From assembly GCA_964188305.1 (NCBI GenBank), contig OZ076893.1: a DNA stretch of 64,000 nucleotides. The stretch is one strand, 5' to 3'. The stretch comes from Podarcis bocagei. Lineage: Eukaryota. The notes beneath the pieces are model-generated. The model had not been told where the DNA came from. It ran no database searches and worked only from the letters and a program-made list of their open reading frames with translations. The position numbers were made by a program, and so were the translations under genes. Every line of letters begins with the position of its first letter. Position 1 is the first letter of the stretch. Shown piece by piece: positions 1,391-35,676 of this stretch.

Positions 1391-1682
1391 NNNNNNNNNN
1401 NNNNNNNNNNNNNNNNNNNNNNNNNNNNNNNNNNNNNNNNNNNNNNNNNNNNNNNNNNNNNNNNNNNNNNNNNNNNNNNNNNNNNNNNNNNNNNNNNNNN
1501 NNNNNNNNNNNNNNNNNNNNNNNNNNNNNNNNNNNNNNNNNNNNNNNNNNNNNNNNNNNNNNNNNNNNNNNNNNNNNNNNNNNNNNNNNNNNNNNNNNNN
1601 NNNNNNNNNNNNNNNNNNNNNNNNNNNNNNNNNNNNNNNNNNNNNNNNNNNNNNNNNNNNNNNNNNNNNNNNNNNNNNNNNN
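1391..1682. other. Assembly gap (292 N)
   Basis: Run of N. Confidence 1.
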
Positions 1683-14754: not shown

Positions 14755-15530
14755 TCCAAAATGTTCTCTCCAATCTGGAAGAATGGGAATTAAAATGGCA
14801 AGTGAAATTCAGTTTAAGTGTAAGGTGATACAAAATTCCTAACTTATATATGCTAATGACATCTGAATTGCTGGCAACTGATCAGGAATGAGACTTTGGA
14901 ATGAAGTTGCCAAACCAGTGTTCAGTCGTTATGAAAAAGGGTGAATTCCACCTTGGAGATAATTAGGAAAGGGACTGCTAATATCACAGTCTATGGTACA
15001 ACTACACTTGGAATACTATATACAGTTCACCTCAAAAAAGATATTGTAGAGTTGGAAAGGTTACAGATAGGAGCAACCAAAATGATCAAGGATCTAGAAC
15101 TACTAACAAAAGGTATAAAGGTGAGTAAATAGGGACATAATAGAAGTATACAGATTTATGTATGATGTGGAGAAAGCGGACAGGGAGAAAGACCCTCTCT
15201 TTCATAGTATCTAAGGCCATCCAATGAAGGTGAATGTTAGAAGATTCAGGACAGATGAAAGAATGCATGCACTTCTTCACACAGCGCACAAGATGCAGTG
15301 ATGTCTTTTAAATATTAAGCAAATTCATGGAGTATCAACAACTACTAGCCCTGATGGCTATTTACTGCCTCCAGAGGCAGAGGAAACATGCCCTGAATAC
15401 CTGTTGGTAGGGAGCTTAAGTGGTGAGTCCTACTGCACTCAGGTCATGCTTGCAGGCTTCCCTTGGCATCTCACTGACCACTACAAGAACAGGGTGCTGG
15501 ATCTGATATGCCTCAGGTCTCTTACATTCT
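14755..15530 (+). mobile_element. CR1 LINE 3' fragment (degenerate)
   Basis: WQVKF...KCKV and HLKKDIVELERLQIGATKMIK motifs of the CR1 ORF2 C-terminus, followed by a squamate CR1 3' UTR-like sequence. Confidence 0.8.
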
Positions 15531-17369
15531 TCTATTTAATCACTATTGGTATTATCAGACTAAGTCACAGTCGGAGTAGAGCTATTGAAAACAACTGACT
15601 TTAGTTATGATGAACTTAAATCCATTGATTTCAACAGGTCCATTTTAAGTATGACTTATTCTTATATCCCCTATTTCTCAAAACTTACAAATACACATGG
15701 GAAGCAACACCACTTACCATTCCATAAGCAATCCTGAGACCTCAGATCATTTCAGCTCCTCCTTTTCTGGAACTGCTTCCATCCCAGCCAGGTTGGGTTT
15801 TAATTTAAGTTTTTTTGTGGGGAGGGGGTACTCTTAAGATGAAGGCGTCCTTCGGTTTGCTTTTTTACCCTCTTTCTCATCCCCCTTCTGTGCTACATTT
15901 TTAAGACTGTAAGCCTGAATTTTTTTATTGATCTGTAAGCTCTTTTGGCTGAATATCTGGTTTTAAAGATGCTTTAAATAAGAAATAAATATTAGAGAAC
16001 AACACTAGGGAGGATGAAAACCAGCAGCTATCCAGGCACAAAGCATGGCAAGCATCAGATGTTGACACCACTACTCTCAATGAAGCAATTATGGGAAGTA
16101 ATGCACAAAAGTATTGCCATAAATAAGTTGACTGTAATTTGTTTATTGAGCTAACTACAGTATCTACAGTAGATACTTCTGTAAGATGTTATGGTGCCTA
16201 CATGCCAAACAAGGTATCTGGTCTGCAAGGTCCTTTGATACTCCAAACTACTATCACACTATCTTTCCATCACCCACCTAGAGATTTATAAACACCACTA
16301 GTCAAAGAGTTAATCTACATTTCACCACTCCCCACCCCCATCCCATTGTTGTTACTTTTCAAGGTAAGTGGTGAACTGTAAGCAATAAGAAAAAACTTGG
16401 CTTTTGTTAACATGCCCACATTTGTTGTAGCCTCTAAAAAAACAGCAAAGTGGTACACAGTCATAAATAAAAATAAAGCCATCTTAAAAAAAAGAGATTT
16501 TAAAATTAACAGAACTAGGCAATATTCCATACAAAATCAAGGATACATAGCAGTTTTCAGACATCAGCAAACACTCTCAATAAAAATTTAGCCCACCAAG
16601 AGAAATCTAACAGAGATGAGGACAGGTATACCTTAGCTGGCAAAGTGTTCCACTACGTGGGCATCACTGTGGAGAAGGTGCAGCCTCATGCCCTTGCAGC
16701 ACTCACATCTGTAAAAGACAGGGCATGGAGGTGCTTTTAGCACTTGCTATTCATATCAGCAAGTTCCAAGTGTGCATTTTGCTTAAATGGTACAAGCTTA
16801 TCAAAGCAACTAAATAGGCAACTGTCTTGGCAGCTGTTTTAGAAGCCTTGAGCATATGCTTCGTTGGCAGAAACTATTTTGCAAGTTATGTTAATCACAA
16901 ACTTTTGTAATCAAGTACCAACCCCAGTCAGATACTAGCCCACAAAATGTTTAAATATTATCAGATTGCAAACTAATAGAACCATTTTAACATTCTGTGA
17001 GCTAGTTTATTCCATTATTGAGAGGTCAGTGGCAAACATTATCTGACTTGAATTGGTCCATCAACAAACTATGAAGCACAAATTAAATTCCTGTATATTT
17101 TGTATGTGTAAGACAGGATGGTGATCAAATGGTGAAACAGCTGGACTTCAGCTGCTCTGCAAAACTCCAATCAACTATCTTATTTGAACCATATAGTCTC
17201 AGTAGCACTTGGCAAATTCACAGTGCTTGGCAAATTCAGAGACAGAGCTATGAAATATTCTGTAAGTTTTATAACCAAGTCTCTAACTCAGGAGAGTTCA
17301 TCTGTAAGGCTCGAGAATGTGGACAAGGGGCTTGGAACAGTCAGTGCAACCATTTGCACTCTGGATGAT

Positions 17370-26700: not shown

Positions 26701-28422
26701 CTGCAAAATGGCTTTAAAATTATACCATAAAGTCCACTATATGTCTTGTGTTCTTCCAGCGACTTGAAAACTAGCAGATTATTATTATAATTTAGGCTAT
26801 CTCTACACACACCATTCTAAATCCAAGACACAACAATAGAATTAAAATTCAGCCACCATACCAAAATCTTGAGTTGCATCACAGATAATAAATGCTAGGT
26901 CCAAACAATATCCACCAATTTCTCCTACAAAAGGGGTAAGCCAATCACTGTTTACACCTCAACAGCCCCCTTGGATTTAATGCAATCCACCAGGATAAGT
27001 AGCCACTGGCTTGCCTTCAGAGTTTGATTTATGGTTTTACACTTTAACAAATCCAAGCCAACTTTAGCCAGAACTTCTGCATAGGTGAGCATAGCTAGAA
27101 GAAAAGAGGAGCTGTCTCTTTAAGATACCATGCTCTGTCCCTGATCCCACGTGGAAACCAACATCAGCAGCACTTTCGCGTTTAGTTCTATGTGATGCAA
27201 GTTGAGGCATCATTTTTTAATAAACATGAGAAAATTGCAGAATACATTCTTCCCCGGAATACAAAATTGGTGAAAAAGCATGCTAAAGTAAGCCCCGGTT
27301 CTCCTCCAAAAGTGTAGTCTCACTATGTGTATTTTTCATTTTTTTTCTACGGCACGTTGCTTCCAGTCCATACTACTCTAACAGAAAGCACTTCACAGAC
27401 AGTGGACACAAACACCGGGATCCATAGGCAACGAAAAGGTACTCCATAAATCGGAAATATTTGCTCTTTTGCATTACATATCATAATTGGGTCGGGAGAA
27501 AAGCAATGCATAGGTATTACATTTCGCGCCACCTCCCCCCTTTCCCCCCACATGTGCCCCCCCAACAAACAAAGGGCACGAAAGCGAAGGTACAAAGTTG
27601 GCAAATGCAGCATTTATCTCCTGTGCAATCGCTCCTCGTTGCCCCAAAGTTGTGCAGCTCGTGCATTCCCACCTCCCACCACCATTCAAGGGAGAAAGGG
27701 GATTTTCACGTTCTCGCATTGTCGGGAACGAGCTGTAAAAGAGCTTTTGCCTTTCCAAAGCAGTCATCAACAACAAAAATAGGCATCAGTTTTAACTCCT
27801 TGCTCTCTGAGAGCTGAAACCCCGACGTGAGGGGACGCAGGGTTCAACCTGATCTCTTAGGGGAGAAATCGGGGGACGGAGACGATTTGGGGCATTTTTT
27901 AGGATTTTTTTGGGCTATTTTTTATTTTGTTATATGCCTCGGTTCTCCCTCCATTTTGGTTGTTTATGATACTGACAACAAGCTGTCCCTGCTCTCTCTC
28001 CAGATCTCTCCTGCTTCCAGTTAGAGACACCCCCCCACCTCCCCAATACAACCCACCCTCCAAACGCCTTCCCCAAACTCCTCTCTCGTACCCACGCAAG
28101 AAGGGAAAGAAAAGCCTCCGCGGCCGGTCCAAGTCAGGCGGGAGGCAATCTCGTCTCTTGATGGGGTGGGGGGGGGGGAAGGAGAGGAAAAAACTTTTGT
28201 CCAATAAAAAGCGGGAGGAGAAGGGCGCTGCACGCCCCAAAGCGACTCGGGAGCCCCCTAAAGCTTTGGCTGCGGGGTCCCCGCCGCCCCGTCCCGAGAG
28301 TGCAACCCGCCCGCGACATTTCTGCGCAAAATGTGGCCGCTTTGGTGCTACGGCTGAATTTATATTAATTTTCTCTCATTTTTTGGGCACCGCGGGCTCT
28401 TAATGTCTTCCGCTCCCTCCTC

Positions 28423-28450
28423 GCTGCTGCTGCTGCTGCTACTGCTGCTG
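28423..28450. repeat. (GCT)n trinucleotide repeat in PLAG1 intron 1
   Basis: (GCT)6 ACT (GCT)2. Confidence 0.9.
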
Positions 28451-28923
28451 TCACTATATTCAAAGCACAAGCTCCGGAGCTCGGGGGGGGGGGGGAGAGA
28501 TAGAGAAGAGAGAGACTCCGAGCGAGGAAAGCGAGGTTGGGGGGGCTGGGGGCTTCTCAAAAAAGTTTCTGCCTCCCCGTTTGTATAACAAGAAACAAGG
28601 GGGAAGAAGAAGGGGGGTGCGATCCTCTCAGTGAAAACCTCACTGAAGGAGTTGGGGGGGGGGAGCGGAGGAGAGGAGAAACGAAGTCCGAAAGCTGAGG
28701 AAAGCGAGGCTTTCTTTCGAGGGGCTGCTCCTGGGGACCCCCGCGAGAAGCGCGACGCAGCCCAGGAGTGCAAGGGAAGGAGATGAAGCCGCACAAACTT
28801 TCCCTCATCGCTGCCGCTCCGCTCTCCCCCCTTCTCCTCCTCCTCCCCCTTCAGAATTTAAATAACCCTAATATTTCCCTGCTGAACCCCGGCTCCTGAC
28901 CCCCAAACCCGCAGCAGACTCAC

Positions 28924-29100
28924 CGCGGGAGCCTCAGCATCCCCTCAGCGCCCTCTTCCCGCCTTTTACAGGGTTCTCCGATTTTTCTGTAATTTTTTCC
29001 CCATATTTCGGGCTGGACGCGGCGGGCCTGGAAATTGTTTGCTTTCCCCTCTTTCCAGCAGCCATTGTAGTGTATGCGCTGCGGTGCAGCTCAGCCTGCC
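28924..29100 (-). other. PLAG1: PLAG1 first exon (5' leader); TSS position approximate
   Basis: ACAATGGCTGCTGGAAAGAGG...TTTCCAGGCCCGCCGCGTCCAGCCCGAAATATG...CCCGCG|gtgagt with a consensus donor at 28922-28923, inside the CpG island; matches the recalled human exon 1. Confidence 0.85.
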
Positions 29101-29430
29101 GCACACGCCGCGCCCACACCGCCAGCCGCCCACACGCGCCGCGGGTTGGACACCTCCCCCTGTCACTCAGCCCTTTGGCCGCACCCTGGAGGCGGCCACT
29201 TCGGGGCTCGCGGCTCGCCCCGTTGGTAGGACGGGACGCCGCTCCGGGAAAGGAGAGGAGGAACCGCGCGCGGATTGGCCCGGCGGCGGCGGGCTCCGAG
29301 CTGTCTTTCAGAGCGCCTCGGCGAGAGCGATTGGGCGCCGGGCCTGTCAGTTTCGGCAGGGCTGCGGGGCAGTAACGGGGTAGGCTGCGCCGCTTATAAG
29401 GTGGCTGCCCAAGCCGCTGACGTCTTTCGA
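29100..29430. promoter_or_regulatory. Bidirectional PLAG1-CHCHD7 core promoter
   Basis: Lies between divergent first exons. ATTGG (CCAAT) boxes at 29274-29278 and 29330-29334, (CGG)4 at 29281-29292, palindromic TTATAA at 29394-29399, CRE-like TGACGTC at 29418-29424. Confidence 0.8.
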
Positions 29431-29481
29431 ATTGGAAGCGAGTCCCGAGCCCGCGAGTCGGTTTCCCTCACGGCGGCTGAG
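29425..29481 (+). other. CHCHD7: CHCHD7 non-coding first exon (start approximate)
   Basis: Ends in a consensus donor GAG|gtgagt at 29482; downstream of the TATA-like and CRE-like motifs. Confidence 0.7.
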
Positions 29482-29722
29482 GTGAGTGTCGCCTTCCGAG
29501 GAGCCGCCTGGTCGCCGGGCGCCTGGTCCGGCCTCGCTGTCAGCGCCAACCTCCCGCCCGCTTTGAAGGGCAGCGACAACGTCCCGCCCGCTCCCTCCGG
29601 CGCCTGGCTTCGTTGCCGGGCGTGCGAGGCGGGAACGGAGCGCGGCGTCAGGCCCCGCGGCACCACGCGGAGCAGCCCCCGAGAGCTGGCGCTAGGCTAG
29701 AGGCTTGTGGAGGGCGGGCCGG

Positions 29723-29740
29723 GGCGGCGGCGGCGGCGGC
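29723..29740. repeat. (GGC)6 repeat in CHCHD7 intron 1
   Basis: ggcggcggcggcggcggc. Confidence 0.85.
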
Positions 29741-30365
29741 TGCAGGCCCGTGCAAGGCGCCCGTGGGTGCGCCCAGGTGCGCCTCCTGAGACTGCTCCGC
29801 CCATCGCTGCCCTTTCTGTGGCTGGGCCAGGAAGCGCTTCCTTCTCCTTTTTGCCCTCGGTGGCTCCCGACATGGCAGCTGAAGTGGGTGCGCGGGTGTG
29901 GGTGTGTAAGAGACATGCGGCATGTTGTAGCTCCCATCCCTTATAGCTGCTGCTCCAGGGCTCGGGGTGGGTTGGGCGCTGCAGCATCCACACCCTCCAG
30001 CCCATCCGCCGGGTGAGACTGGAACTAAAGAGATAAGGGTGGGGAGCTTCGACGTCAAATCTAAAGCGGTTTTGCTCCCCCGCCCCGCCCCGCCCCGCCC
30101 CTTCATTCATTCATTTATTTTTCTTTTTGCATCTTATGTTGCATCGACTCTTTTCTGTTCCAACTCTGGCATCTGTAGAGACTGCCTTGAGTTCTACTGT
30201 TTCAGTAAATGGTAGGGAAAGCAGCTTTGCTGAGCCTGTGGGCCTCCATGAAAGCACTTGGTTGGAAAGGGACAGTACTTAGACTGGAGGGGGGGATCCT
30301 CCAGATTGGCAGTCTTATTTTATATGTATTCTGCAGCATGATGTTGATACAACAATAGTGCATTA

Positions 30366-30636
30366 AGGTAAAGGGACCCCTGACCATTAGGTCCAGTCGC
30401 AGACCTTGCTTTATTGGCCAAGGGAGCCGGCATACAGCTTCCGGGTCATGTGGCCGGCATGACTAAGTCGCTTCTGGTGAAACCAGAGCACCTCATGCAA
30501 ACGCCGTGTACCTTCCCACCTGAGCGGTACCTATTTATCTACTTGCACTTTGATGTGCTTTTGAACTGCTAGGTTGACAGGAGCTGGGACCTTCTGATCG
30601 GCAAGCCCTAGCCCACAGCACCACCCGCATCCCGGT
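30366..30636 (-). mobile_element. Sauria SINE with 12-bp TSD
   Basis: aggtaaagggacccctgacc...tacctatttatctacttgcac...ccacagcaccacccgcatccc; TSD AATAGTGCATTA at 30354-30365 and 30637-30648. Confidence 0.9.
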
Positions 30637-35577: not shown

Positions 35578-35676
35578 GAAGCAGATGCCTCTAGCAAATG
35601 TATGGATAAGAATAACTACAATAGAGATGCATGCACCCTGTACTTTTTAAAATACAAGAGCTGCAAAAAGTTTTGG
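35578..35676 (+). CDS. CHCHD7: CHCHD7 coding exon 2
   Basis: ttcaag|[33 protein letters not shown]|gtaagt; completes the twin CX9C motif (C16-C26, C37-C47). Confidence 0.97.

What the first reader, a model, noticed from the sequence alone, without database searches (positions are those of the whole stretch)
28934..29065. 43-aa basic uORF in PLAG1 exon 1
Seen: minus strand ACAATGG starts MAAGKRGKQTISRPAASSPKYGEKITEKSENPVKGGKRALRGC*, ending 10 nt before the donor. From memory the human equivalent reads MAAGKRRKETISRPAASSPKYEKKI...GGC*, also 43 codons, with a nearly identical N-terminal half and the same stop position. Length conservation through a divergent C-terminal half would suggest selection on the frame. 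Caveat: GCAGCCATTGT over the AUG resembles a YY1 site, so DNA-level constraint could explain part of it.
Basis: partly seen in the sequence, partly recalled or inferred. Interest (0 to 1): 0.72.

Follow-up and report, generated by a model that had tools for sequence, protein, structure and literature searches.

The report
PLAG1 leader uORF, conserved as DNA
The 43-codon upstream reading frame in the first, non-coding exon of the growth-control gene PLAG1 is real and its start is kept from bony fish to reptile and mouse, but it changes like constrained non-coding sequence, so it is at most a translation brake inside a very old regulatory element, not a conserved small protein.

Summary
Window 28934-29065 (minus strand) is an ATG frame of 43 codons in context ACAATGG. 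Its TGA lies 10 nt before a GTGAGT donor, in a CpG island head-to-head with a CHCHD7-like gene.

The frame-selection reading does not hold. I recovered the same exon from a close relative, 10 teleost-type contigs (one a named catfish with chchd7-exon1-plag1 in order) and the mouse Plag1 leader printed in a paper.
- **Start:** the ATG and the first 24 codons are ungapped in every sequence.
- **Substitutions:** third codon positions are the most conserved, 22/23 reptile versus catfish, against 10/29 in the neighbouring CHCHD7 coding exon. pN is about equal to pS.
- **Frame length:** 43 codons in the amniotes, but 32, 26 or 53-54 in fish, through a stop at codon 33 and 1-nt indels.
- **Extent:** conservation is equally strong 23 nt upstream of the ATG and reappears at the donor and in intron 1.

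Mouse Plag1 is already listed among published hyperconserved leaders; I found no paper on the uORF itself.

The most likely role is a peptide-independent upstream start inside a nucleotide-level regulatory element.

The parts
29062..29068 (-). ACAATGG start context (A at -3, G at +4), invariant in all 13 lineages compared
   Evidence: mouse
28974..29088 (-). Hyperconserved nucleotide block from 23 nt upstream of the ATG through about codon 30. It aligns by BLAST to teleost contigs across roughly 115 nt
29058..29082 (-). Inverted repeat GCAGCGCAT / ATGGCTGC that would place the uAUG in an 8-bp hairpin stem (about -10 to -12 kcal/mol). The stems are invariant, and the only upstream indels fall in the loop (5-11 nt)
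   Evidence: no covariation is possible because the stems never vary
29107..29117 (-). GC box GTGGGCG(C/T)GGC about 45 nt upstream of the ATG, shared with the teleost loci; a likely proximal promoter element
28966..29004 (-). Second ATG (AATATGG) in another frame, 12 codons here. The ATG is conserved in all lineages, and this frame is open to the exon end in most teleosts
28934..28942 (-). GGATGCTGA: a motif conserved as GGATG plus three variable bases, TAA in most fish. It holds the uORF1 stop in amniotes and a third ATG (28940) that reads across the exon end
28918..28923 (-). Splice donor GTGAGT; exon 1 ends at 28924
   Evidence: The catfish gene model uses the equivalent donor, and the mouse mRNA changes sequence at the same point
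28848..28876 (-). Intron 1 conserved non-coding element (AAATATYRGGGTTATTYAAATT...), about 48 nt past the donor, shared by reptile and teleosts
35578..35676 (+). CHCH-domain exon of the divergently transcribed neighbour (CHCHD7-like). It identifies the locus and serves as the coding control

Best explanation
The stretch is the 5' leader exon (exon 1) of PLAG1. It starts in the CpG-island promoter shared head-to-head with CHCHD7. About 115 nt of it, from 23 nt upstream of the ATG through roughly codon 30, form a nucleotide-level hyperconserved element that is kept nearly unchanged and ungapped from teleosts to a reptile and mouse. The element contains an AUG in a strong initiation context, which opens a short upstream frame ending before the PLAG1 start. 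What is preserved is the nucleotide sequence and the start codon, not the peptide or the frame length. Inferred mechanism: scanning ribosomes that meet this AUG translate a short, dispensable peptide, so fewer reach the PLAG1 start, and further upstream ATGs in the leader would add to this. The surrounding invariant sequence most likely also serves as a promoter-proximal DNA site or an RNA element, possibly a small hairpin holding the AUG. Shown here: the ORF, its position, its orthology, and the non-coding pattern of change. Inferred: that it is transcribed from upstream of the AUG in this species, that it is translated, and that it represses PLAG1.
For: The ORF, its context and the donor are. 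Locus identity rests on the CHCH exon on the other strand. It also rests on the catfish locus L012, which has a chchd7 exon, the same exon 1, then an exon beginning the PLAG1 zinc-finger protein and a last exon ending ...RFHQAFQ. The PLAG1/CHCHD7 bidirectional promoter is described in PMC5359603. The ATG and codons 1-24 are ungapped in 11 lineages, plus L013 and mouse. Third positions are the most conserved, at 21-22 of 23 against teleosts, and pS is 0.065-0.19 against pN 0.094-0.17. In the CHCHD7 control, position 3 is identical at 10/29 (Fisher p=7e-6). ORF length varies: 43, 32, 26, 53 and 54 codons. In alignment A3, invariant columns make up 18/23 just upstream of the ATG, 55/72 in codons 1-24 and 22/57 in codons 25-43. 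Against the close relative L001, the region 29156-28857 is 294/300 identical and runs into the intron, while the flanks are about 70-85% identical. Mouse Plag1 is one of the hyperconserved transcript leaders tested by Byeon et al. and re-analysed in PMC9456764. Its RefSeq leader starts 51 nt upstream of the same ATG. Its EPD overlap of 23/60 suggests a start about 38 nt upstream of the ATG, which is my inference. Six RNA-derived runs from five studies hold 25-33% of the sampled words of 28900-29180.
Against: In mouse, none of the refTSS CAGE reads lie within 10 nt of the annotated 5' end, and one 'internal' peak holds 2030 reads at a position not given. That peak could lie downstream of the AUG. 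Because everything around the AUG is invariant, its conservation cannot be credited to its role as a start codon. The orthologues were found through peptide or pattern similarity, so lineages that lost the ATG or the N-terminal frame could have been missed. PLAG1 does not appear in the held supplements of two small-ORF catalogues.
Confidence: 0.6

Rival explanations
1. The block is purely a DNA element: a promoter-proximal or downstream core-promoter site (for example a YY1-like site over ACAATGGCTGC) or a developmental conserved non-coding element overlapping exon 1. The ATG is incidental. The uORF then has little or no effect on PLAG1 output, either because most transcripts start downstream of it or because it is bypassed.
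For: The substitution pattern is non-coding. Conservation extends upstream of the ATG and into intron 1, including a second block at 28848-28876. 59% of the mouse leader overlaps an ENCODE promoter, no CAGE reads fall at the annotated 5' end, and one internal peak exists. PMC9456764 reports that 93% of hyperconserved leaders overlap annotated promoters. YY1 motifs are over-represented just downstream of human start sites (PMC8384218).
Against: A gapless, near-invariant run of about 100 nt is far longer than a transcription-factor site. The mouse RefSeq mRNA includes the ATG, 51 nt from its 5' end. The context A-3/G+4 is optimal, so any transcript containing the ATG should use it. The match to the YY1 consensus is only about 8 of 11 by my recollection, and I did not score it with a matrix.
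Confidence: 0.25
2. One reading: the frame encodes a conserved basic micropeptide of 43 residues whose sequence or length is under selection.
For: The frame is 43 codons long with the same stop position in the reptile, its relative, mouse and the mammal-type database entries. There are no indels between reptile and mouse across the divergent last 18 codons, where by eye about 24 of 54 nt differ. The N-terminal 21 residues are nearly identical across vertebrates.
Against: pN is about equal to pS, and third positions are the most conserved. The replacements are radical: G/R, R/T, K/E, S/F, A/E, P/K and G/E. Between the window and L001, all three ORF changes are non-synonymous. Fish carry a stop at codon 33, or frameshifts, yet keep the downstream spacing and the GGATG motif. 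At this GC content a frame stays open over 18 codons by chance about 50-70% of the time. No Pfam family matches. PLAG1 is absent from the held supplements of a catalogue built on amino-acid conservation.
Confidence: 0.06
3. The block is an RNA element acting in the mRNA leader. It could be the small hairpin that pairs the uAUG with GCAGCGCAT upstream, or a protein-binding platform in the A-rich part, that tunes ribosome loading or start-site choice independently of uORF translation.
For: The same 8-bp stem is predicted in every lineage, at -9.9 to -11.7 kcal/mol, and the indels upstream of the ATG fall only in its loop. The window hairpin has z=-3.0 against shuffles. The conserved block lies almost wholly in the transcribed part.
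Against: The stems never vary, so there is no covariation support. The other three species give z between -0.6 and -1.7, and the whole exon folds no better than shuffles (z=-1.58). No Rfam family matches. The mouse leader was scored inactive in the bicistronic IRES-type assay. Conservation also continues into the intron, which a mature-mRNA element does not explain.
Confidence: 0.09

Closest known systems
Hyperconserved 5' transcript leaders (hTLs) of vertebrate developmental genes (Byeon et al. 2021 set, re-analysed by Akirtava et al. 2022, PMC9456764)
   Same: Mouse Plag1 NM_019969 is itself in the tested hTL set. Here the same leader shows near-invariance from teleosts to a reptile, overlaps a promoter and lies in a CpG island.
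   Different: That work treats whole leaders and IRES-like activity, and Plag1 was scored inactive. In what I could search, it does not describe the upstream ATG, the ORF, its variable end or its non-coding substitution pattern.
Peptide-independent repressive uORFs with conserved start codons (the general vertebrate class)
   Same: It has a strong-context upstream AUG, an in-frame stop before the main ORF, a start conserved across vertebrates, and a peptide free to drift.
   Different: Here the first 24 codons are frozen at the nucleotide level, including synonymous sites. Ordinary conserved uORFs do not show this, which points to a second, overlapping function.
Conserved-peptide uORFs and micropeptides
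   Same: It is a short basic ORF in a leader with an N-terminal half nearly identical across vertebrates.
   Different: It lacks the defining signature: there is no excess of synonymous change, and ORF length and stop are not conserved outside amniotes.
YY1 sites just downstream of transcription starts, whose ATGGC core often coincides with an ATG
   Same: The ATGGC core lies over the ATG. If the mouse inference holds, it sits a few tens of nt downstream of the likely start, and it is invariant.
   Different: It is only a partial consensus match, unscored with a matrix. The invariant run is ten times longer than a YY1 site, and binding was not tested.

Membership tests
Conserved-peptide uORF / micropeptide | Purifying selection on the amino-acid sequence (dN/dS well below 1, with change concentrated at third codon positions) | tested here: not met
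   variable columns fall 7/6/4 at positions 1/2/3, and pN is about equal to pS; the CHCHD7 control exon shows the coding pattern (p=7e-6).
Conserved-peptide uORF / micropeptide | ORF length and stop position conserved among orthologues | tested here: not met
   43 codons in the amniotes sampled, but 32, 26, 53 and 54 codons in teleost-type loci, through a stop at codon 33 and 1-nt indels.
Conserved-peptide uORF / micropeptide | The peptide is made and detectable | not testable with these tools
   No ribosome profiling or proteomics tool was available. PLAG1 was not found in the held supplements of PMC10032668.
Regulatory (peptide-independent) uORF | The AUG lies in the mature mRNA upstream of the main start, so the transcription start is upstream of it | tested here: inconclusive
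   The mouse RefSeq leader starts 51 nt upstream of the same AUG, and the EPD overlap suggests a start about 38 nt upstream (my inference). However, the CAGE peak is 'internal' at an unstated position.
Regulatory (peptide-independent) uORF | Favourable initiation context | tested here: met
   ACAATGG, with A at -3 and G at +4, is invariant in all lineages.
Regulatory (peptide-independent) uORF | In-frame stop before the main ORF | tested here: met
   The TGA lies inside exon 1 in the window. The fish stops lie inside exon 1 in most loci. In the catfish spliced gene model the stop comes 7 codons into the next exon, 80 nt before the plag1 ATG.
Regulatory (peptide-independent) uORF | Start codon conserved among orthologues | tested here: met
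   It is present in the window, L001-L005, L008-L013 and mouse. Caveat: the hits were found by similarity to this region, so losses could be under-sampled.
Regulatory (peptide-independent) uORF | Ribosome occupancy and repression of the main ORF | not testable with these tools
   This needs ribosome profiling and reporter assays.
Hyperconserved transcript leader / conserved non-coding element | Nucleotide conservation far above the neutral level across distant vertebrates, independent of reading frame | tested here: met
   about 115 nt align between reptile and teleosts at 84% or more, with 76% of columns invariant across 10 sequences. Synonymous sites in the neighbouring coding exon are saturated.
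Hyperconserved transcript leader / conserved non-coding element | Listed in the published hTL set | tested here: met
   Mouse Plag1 NM_019969 is in Dataset S3 of PMC9456764, which its Methods restrict to leaders classified as hyperconserved.
YY1 downstream promoter site | Match to the YY1 binding matrix | tested here: inconclusive
   The ATGGC core is present. About 8 of 11 positions match the consensus as I recall it. No matrix scan tool was available.
YY1 downstream promoter site | YY1 occupancy | not testable with these tools
   This needs ChIP or CUT&RUN.

The most novel reading that the evidence does not exclude
A roughly 115-nt leader element, unchanged for over 400 million years, holds the first PLAG1 upstream AUG inside a small invariant hairpin. 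It acts as a dual DNA/RNA switch that sets how many ribosomes enter the stack of upstream frames, and so sets PLAG1 dosage. If so, growth-associated promoter variants and the tumour rearrangements that replace PLAG1 exon 1 would also remove or alter a translational brake. (That those rearrangements replace exon 1 is my recollection of the pleomorphic-adenoma literature; I did not check it here.)
Probability: 0.15. Interest if true: 0.6.

Novelty: new member of a known kind. Interest (0 to 1): 0.35.

Why it matters
PLAG1 dosage controls body size in livestock and humans, and the gene is activated in tumours. The published causal cattle variants lie in this same PLAG1-CHCHD7 promoter (PMC5359603). 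A strong-context upstream start frozen in place from fish to mammals is a plausible, testable layer of dosage control. It would be lost whenever exon 1 is swapped for another gene's first exon. The case also shows that an ORF with a nearly identical N-terminus and equal length in distant species can carry no coding signal at all. Synonymous-site and outgroup checks are needed before calling such an ORF a micropeptide.

Tried and rejected
- **Pfam:** the 43- and 61-residue frames matched no family.
- **Rfam:** nothing credible in 27500-30500.
- **CHCHD7 route:** a word search with the CHCHD7 exon segment, meant to reach annotated orthologous loci, shared no words with any protein.
- **RNA folding:** the whole exon folds no better than shuffles (z=-1.58).
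- **Consensus structure:** RNAalifold gave only invariant pairs or weak long-range pairs, with a covariation term of -0.72.
- **Reads:** There is therefore no read-level evidence on start site or splicing. I sent nothing from 27941-27997 to any tool afterwards.
- **Literature:** searches for a PLAG1 uORF found nothing relevant. PLAG1 is absent from the held supplements of PMC10032668, PMC4568590 and PMC7484617. No supplements are held for PMC13275300.
- **Micropeptide reading:** rejected on the substitution pattern and the variable ORF ends.
- **IRES-type reading:** not favoured, because the mouse leader is scored inactive in the bicistronic assay.
- **P0008:** a spurious repeat-protein hit.
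- **Possibly human entries:** the mammal-type entries P0002, P0003, P0014, P0016 and P0017 may include human sequence. I did not fetch their contigs, align them or search with them.
- **Spliced models:** CHCHD7 and PLAG1 exons were examined singly, by reference.

Full report
**Observation.** The ATG sits in ACAATGG. The TGA is followed by 10 nt and then GTGAGT, so exon 1 ends at 28924. The mechanical ORF extends upstream to a GTG at 29119, giving 61 residues. The exon holds two more ATGs. One at 29004 opens a 12-codon frame in another register, and one at 28940 is open to the exon end. The peptide is basic, with pI 10.5. On its own an ORF this long is unremarkable: 12% of dinucleotide shuffles of the 207-nt exon contain one.

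**Locus.**
- The ORF lies in a CpG island; 28-30 kb has GC 0.64 against 0.30-0.45 around it.
- On the plus strand, 35578-35676 is an exon with a Cx9C...C motif and weak CHCH and COX6B Pfam matches, as expected of CHCHD7.
- No PLAG1 coding exon can be read in the window.
- Orthology was settled through a named genome. In Ameiurus melas (L012) a chchd7-type exon on the minus strand is followed by the same ACAATGG exon at L012:10067. An exon at 15338-15580 then begins the PLAG1 zinc-finger protein, and the last exon ends ...RFHQAFQ. Recognising these as PLAG1 rests on my knowledge of the protein.
- The catfish annotation even calls the upstream frame a 'hypothetical protein'. Its model is spliced from the equivalent donor to an acceptor 100 nt before the plag1 ATG.
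- The head-to-head PLAG1/CHCHD7 promoter is described in PMC5359603.
- Other agents' notes call this genome a lizard or reptile. I did not test that.

**Relatives found.**
- The word search with the 43 residues found only two entries.
- The exhaustive HMMER search with the 61-residue frame found six true hits.
- A final word search with an alignment found 17.
- From these I fetched the following contigs: L001, a close relative whose flanks are 84-86% identical; the teleost-type contigs L002-L005 and L008-L012; and L013, from a DNA pattern scan of metagenomes.
- A mammalian sequence came from a paper. Dataset S3 of PMC9456764 prints the mouse Plag1 leader.
Some may be human, so I did not fetch, align or search them further.

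**The frame is not what is conserved.**
- Codons 1-24 are ungapped in all 11 loci aligned. Variable columns fall 7, 6 and 4 on codon positions 1, 2 and 3, and the minimum changes are 9, 6 and 4.
- Against the teleosts the window is identical at 21-22 of 23 third positions, and at 17-21 of 23 first or second positions. Nei-Gojobori pS is 0.065-0.19 and pN is 0.094-0.17.
- Between the same two genomes, the CHCHD7 coding exon shows identities of 20/29, 21/29 and 10/29. Synonymous sites there are saturated, as expected at this distance. The third-position contrast gives Fisher p=7e-6.
- The replacements that do occur are radical: G/R, R/T, K/E, S/F, A/E, A/V, P/K and G/E.
- Between the window and L001, all three differences in the ORF are non-synonymous and lie in its last eight codons.
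- Reading the printed mouse sequence by eye, codons 1-25 differ at 5 nt in 4 codons, all amino-acid-changing, with no purely synonymous change. Codons 26-43 differ at about 24 of 54 nt, with 13 of 18 residues replaced and no indel.

**ORF ends vary.** The frame is 43 codons in the window, L001 and mouse. It is 32 codons in L003, L004, L005, L008, L010, L011 and L013, through a TGA at codon 33. It is 26 codons in L009, which has +1 and -1 indels in two A runs. It is 53 and 54 codons in L002 and L012, where 1-nt deletions let the frame run past the donor. In most teleosts the distance from the ATG to the GGATG motif and the donor equals that in the window, although the uORF1 frame is already closed there. 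In those fish the second ATG's frame is the one open to the exon end. So the equal length in amniotes follows from an exon that rarely takes indels, plus a conserved motif by the donor that happens to hold the stop. At 55-68% GC an 18-codon stretch stays open by chance about 49-68% of the time.

**Conservation ignores the ORF borders.** In alignment A3, invariant columns make up 18 of the 23 positions just upstream of the ATG, 55 of 72 in codons 1-24 and 22 of 57 in codons 25-43. Against L001, 29156-28857 is 294/300 identical and runs 60 nt into the intron, while the flanks are roughly 50-85% identical. A GC box at 29117-29107 and an intron element at 28876-28848 are also shared with the teleosts.

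**A possible hairpin.** GCAGCGCAT (29082-29074) can pair with ATGGCTGC (29065-29058), which would place the AUG in an 8-bp stem of -9.9 to -11.7 kcal/mol in four species. The only upstream indels lie in its loop. The stems never vary, so this is a hint and not evidence. Significance against shuffles is z=-3.0 in the window but only -0.6 to -1.7 in the other three species.

**Is the AUG in the mRNA?**
- The mouse RefSeq leader begins 51 nt upstream of it.
- The same table gives an ENCODE promoter overlap of 0.59 and an EPD overlap of 0.3833. The EPD values in the table are all multiples of 1/60, so this is 23 of 60 nt. If the EPD window is -49 to +10, the EPD start lies about 13 nt into the leader, about 38 nt upstream of the AUG. 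This is my inference.
- No CAGE reads lie within 10 nt of the annotated end, and one 'internal' peak holds 2030 reads at an unstated position. It may be that same site, or it may lie downstream.
- For the window species, six RNA-derived runs from five studies hold 25-33% of the sampled words of 28900-29180. This is compatible with transcription of the conserved part but is not proof.
I worked beside those places afterwards.

**Mechanism.** A 26-54-codon uORF then lowers initiation at the main start, and the later leader ATGs would add to this. That part is inferred. The frozen synonymous sites need a second explanation at the nucleotide level. One candidate is promoter-proximal DNA. 93% of hyperconserved leaders overlap promoters (PMC9456764), and YY1 motifs cluster just downstream of start sites (PMC8384218). 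The other candidate is an RNA element. I rate the combined reading at 0.6, a purely DNA role with an inert uORF at 0.25, an RNA-structure role at 0.09 and a functional micropeptide at 0.06.

**Known or new.** Mouse Plag1 is one of the hyperconserved leaders tested in the Byeon et al. bicistronic assay and scored inactive, so the extreme conservation is already catalogued. I found no paper that describes this uORF, and PLAG1 is absent from the held supplements of three catalogues. The scan has reported a like case on other DNA of this genome, an SCN8A leader uORF on a YY1-like site (note s1-347505).

**Caveats.** The orthologues were found by similarity to this very region, so lineages lacking the ATG or the frame may be under-sampled. 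Most hits were ORF calls starting well upstream of the ATG, which lessens but does not remove this bias. The mouse comparison was done by eye, because the sequence has no reference id. The taxa of the Logan contigs are unnamed, and 'teleost-type' rests on their similarity to the named catfish locus, a Tc1-type transposase in L002 and a TARA ocean scaffold.

Noticed in passing
window 28848-28876 (minus strand, intron 1): A non-coding element of about 30 nt (AAATATYRGGGTTATTYAAATT...), about 48 nt past the exon 1 donor, is shared almost unchanged by the reptile, its relative and all teleost-type loci that reach that far.
   Followed up: partly
window 29058-29082: The inverted repeat GCAGCGCAT / ATGGCTGC could fold the uAUG into an 8-bp stem. 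The stems are invariant in all lineages, and the loop is the only place upstream of the ATG that takes indels.
   Followed up: partly
window 28966-29004 and 28938-28940: Two further ATGs in exon 1 are conserved in every lineage. At the site where amniotes read GTAAA and teleosts TTGAAA, the stop swaps frames: uORF1 is open and the second frame closed in amniotes, and the reverse holds in most teleosts.
   Followed up: partly
L012:10001-15264 (Ameiurus melas CM022756.1): The public catfish annotation calls the leader uORF a 76-residue 'hypothetical protein AMELA_G00065900', spliced into the exon that holds the plag1 start. The plag1 gene is thus split into two models.
   Followed up: partly
L004:409-1020 (P0006): The 203-residue database protein was called by reading the in-frame TGA as W. 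The tool flagged that the locus does not translate to the query, and the real frame there is 32 codons.
   Followed up: yes
window 27650-27750, 27900-28000, 28350-28450 (intron 1): Further blocks are 92-100% identical to the relative L001, while their surroundings are 60-85% identical. These are probably intronic regulatory elements.
   Followed up: no
window 1391-1682: A run of 292 N lies directly downstream of an ATG-bearing acceptor region at about 1683-1760. By its position it probably masks the first PLAG1 coding exon.
   Followed up: no
L002:304-1344: A Tc1/Sleeping-Beauty-type transposase ORF (HTH_SB, DDE_3) lies 3.7 kb upstream of the exon 1 orthologue in the unnamed NCBI assembly GCA_977066385.1.
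   Followed up: no
window 29272-29334: Two CCAAT boxes (29334-29329 and 29280-29272) and a short GCC repeat lie between the PLAG1 exon 1 and the CHCHD7 side of the island. They are candidate shared-promoter elements.
   Followed up: no
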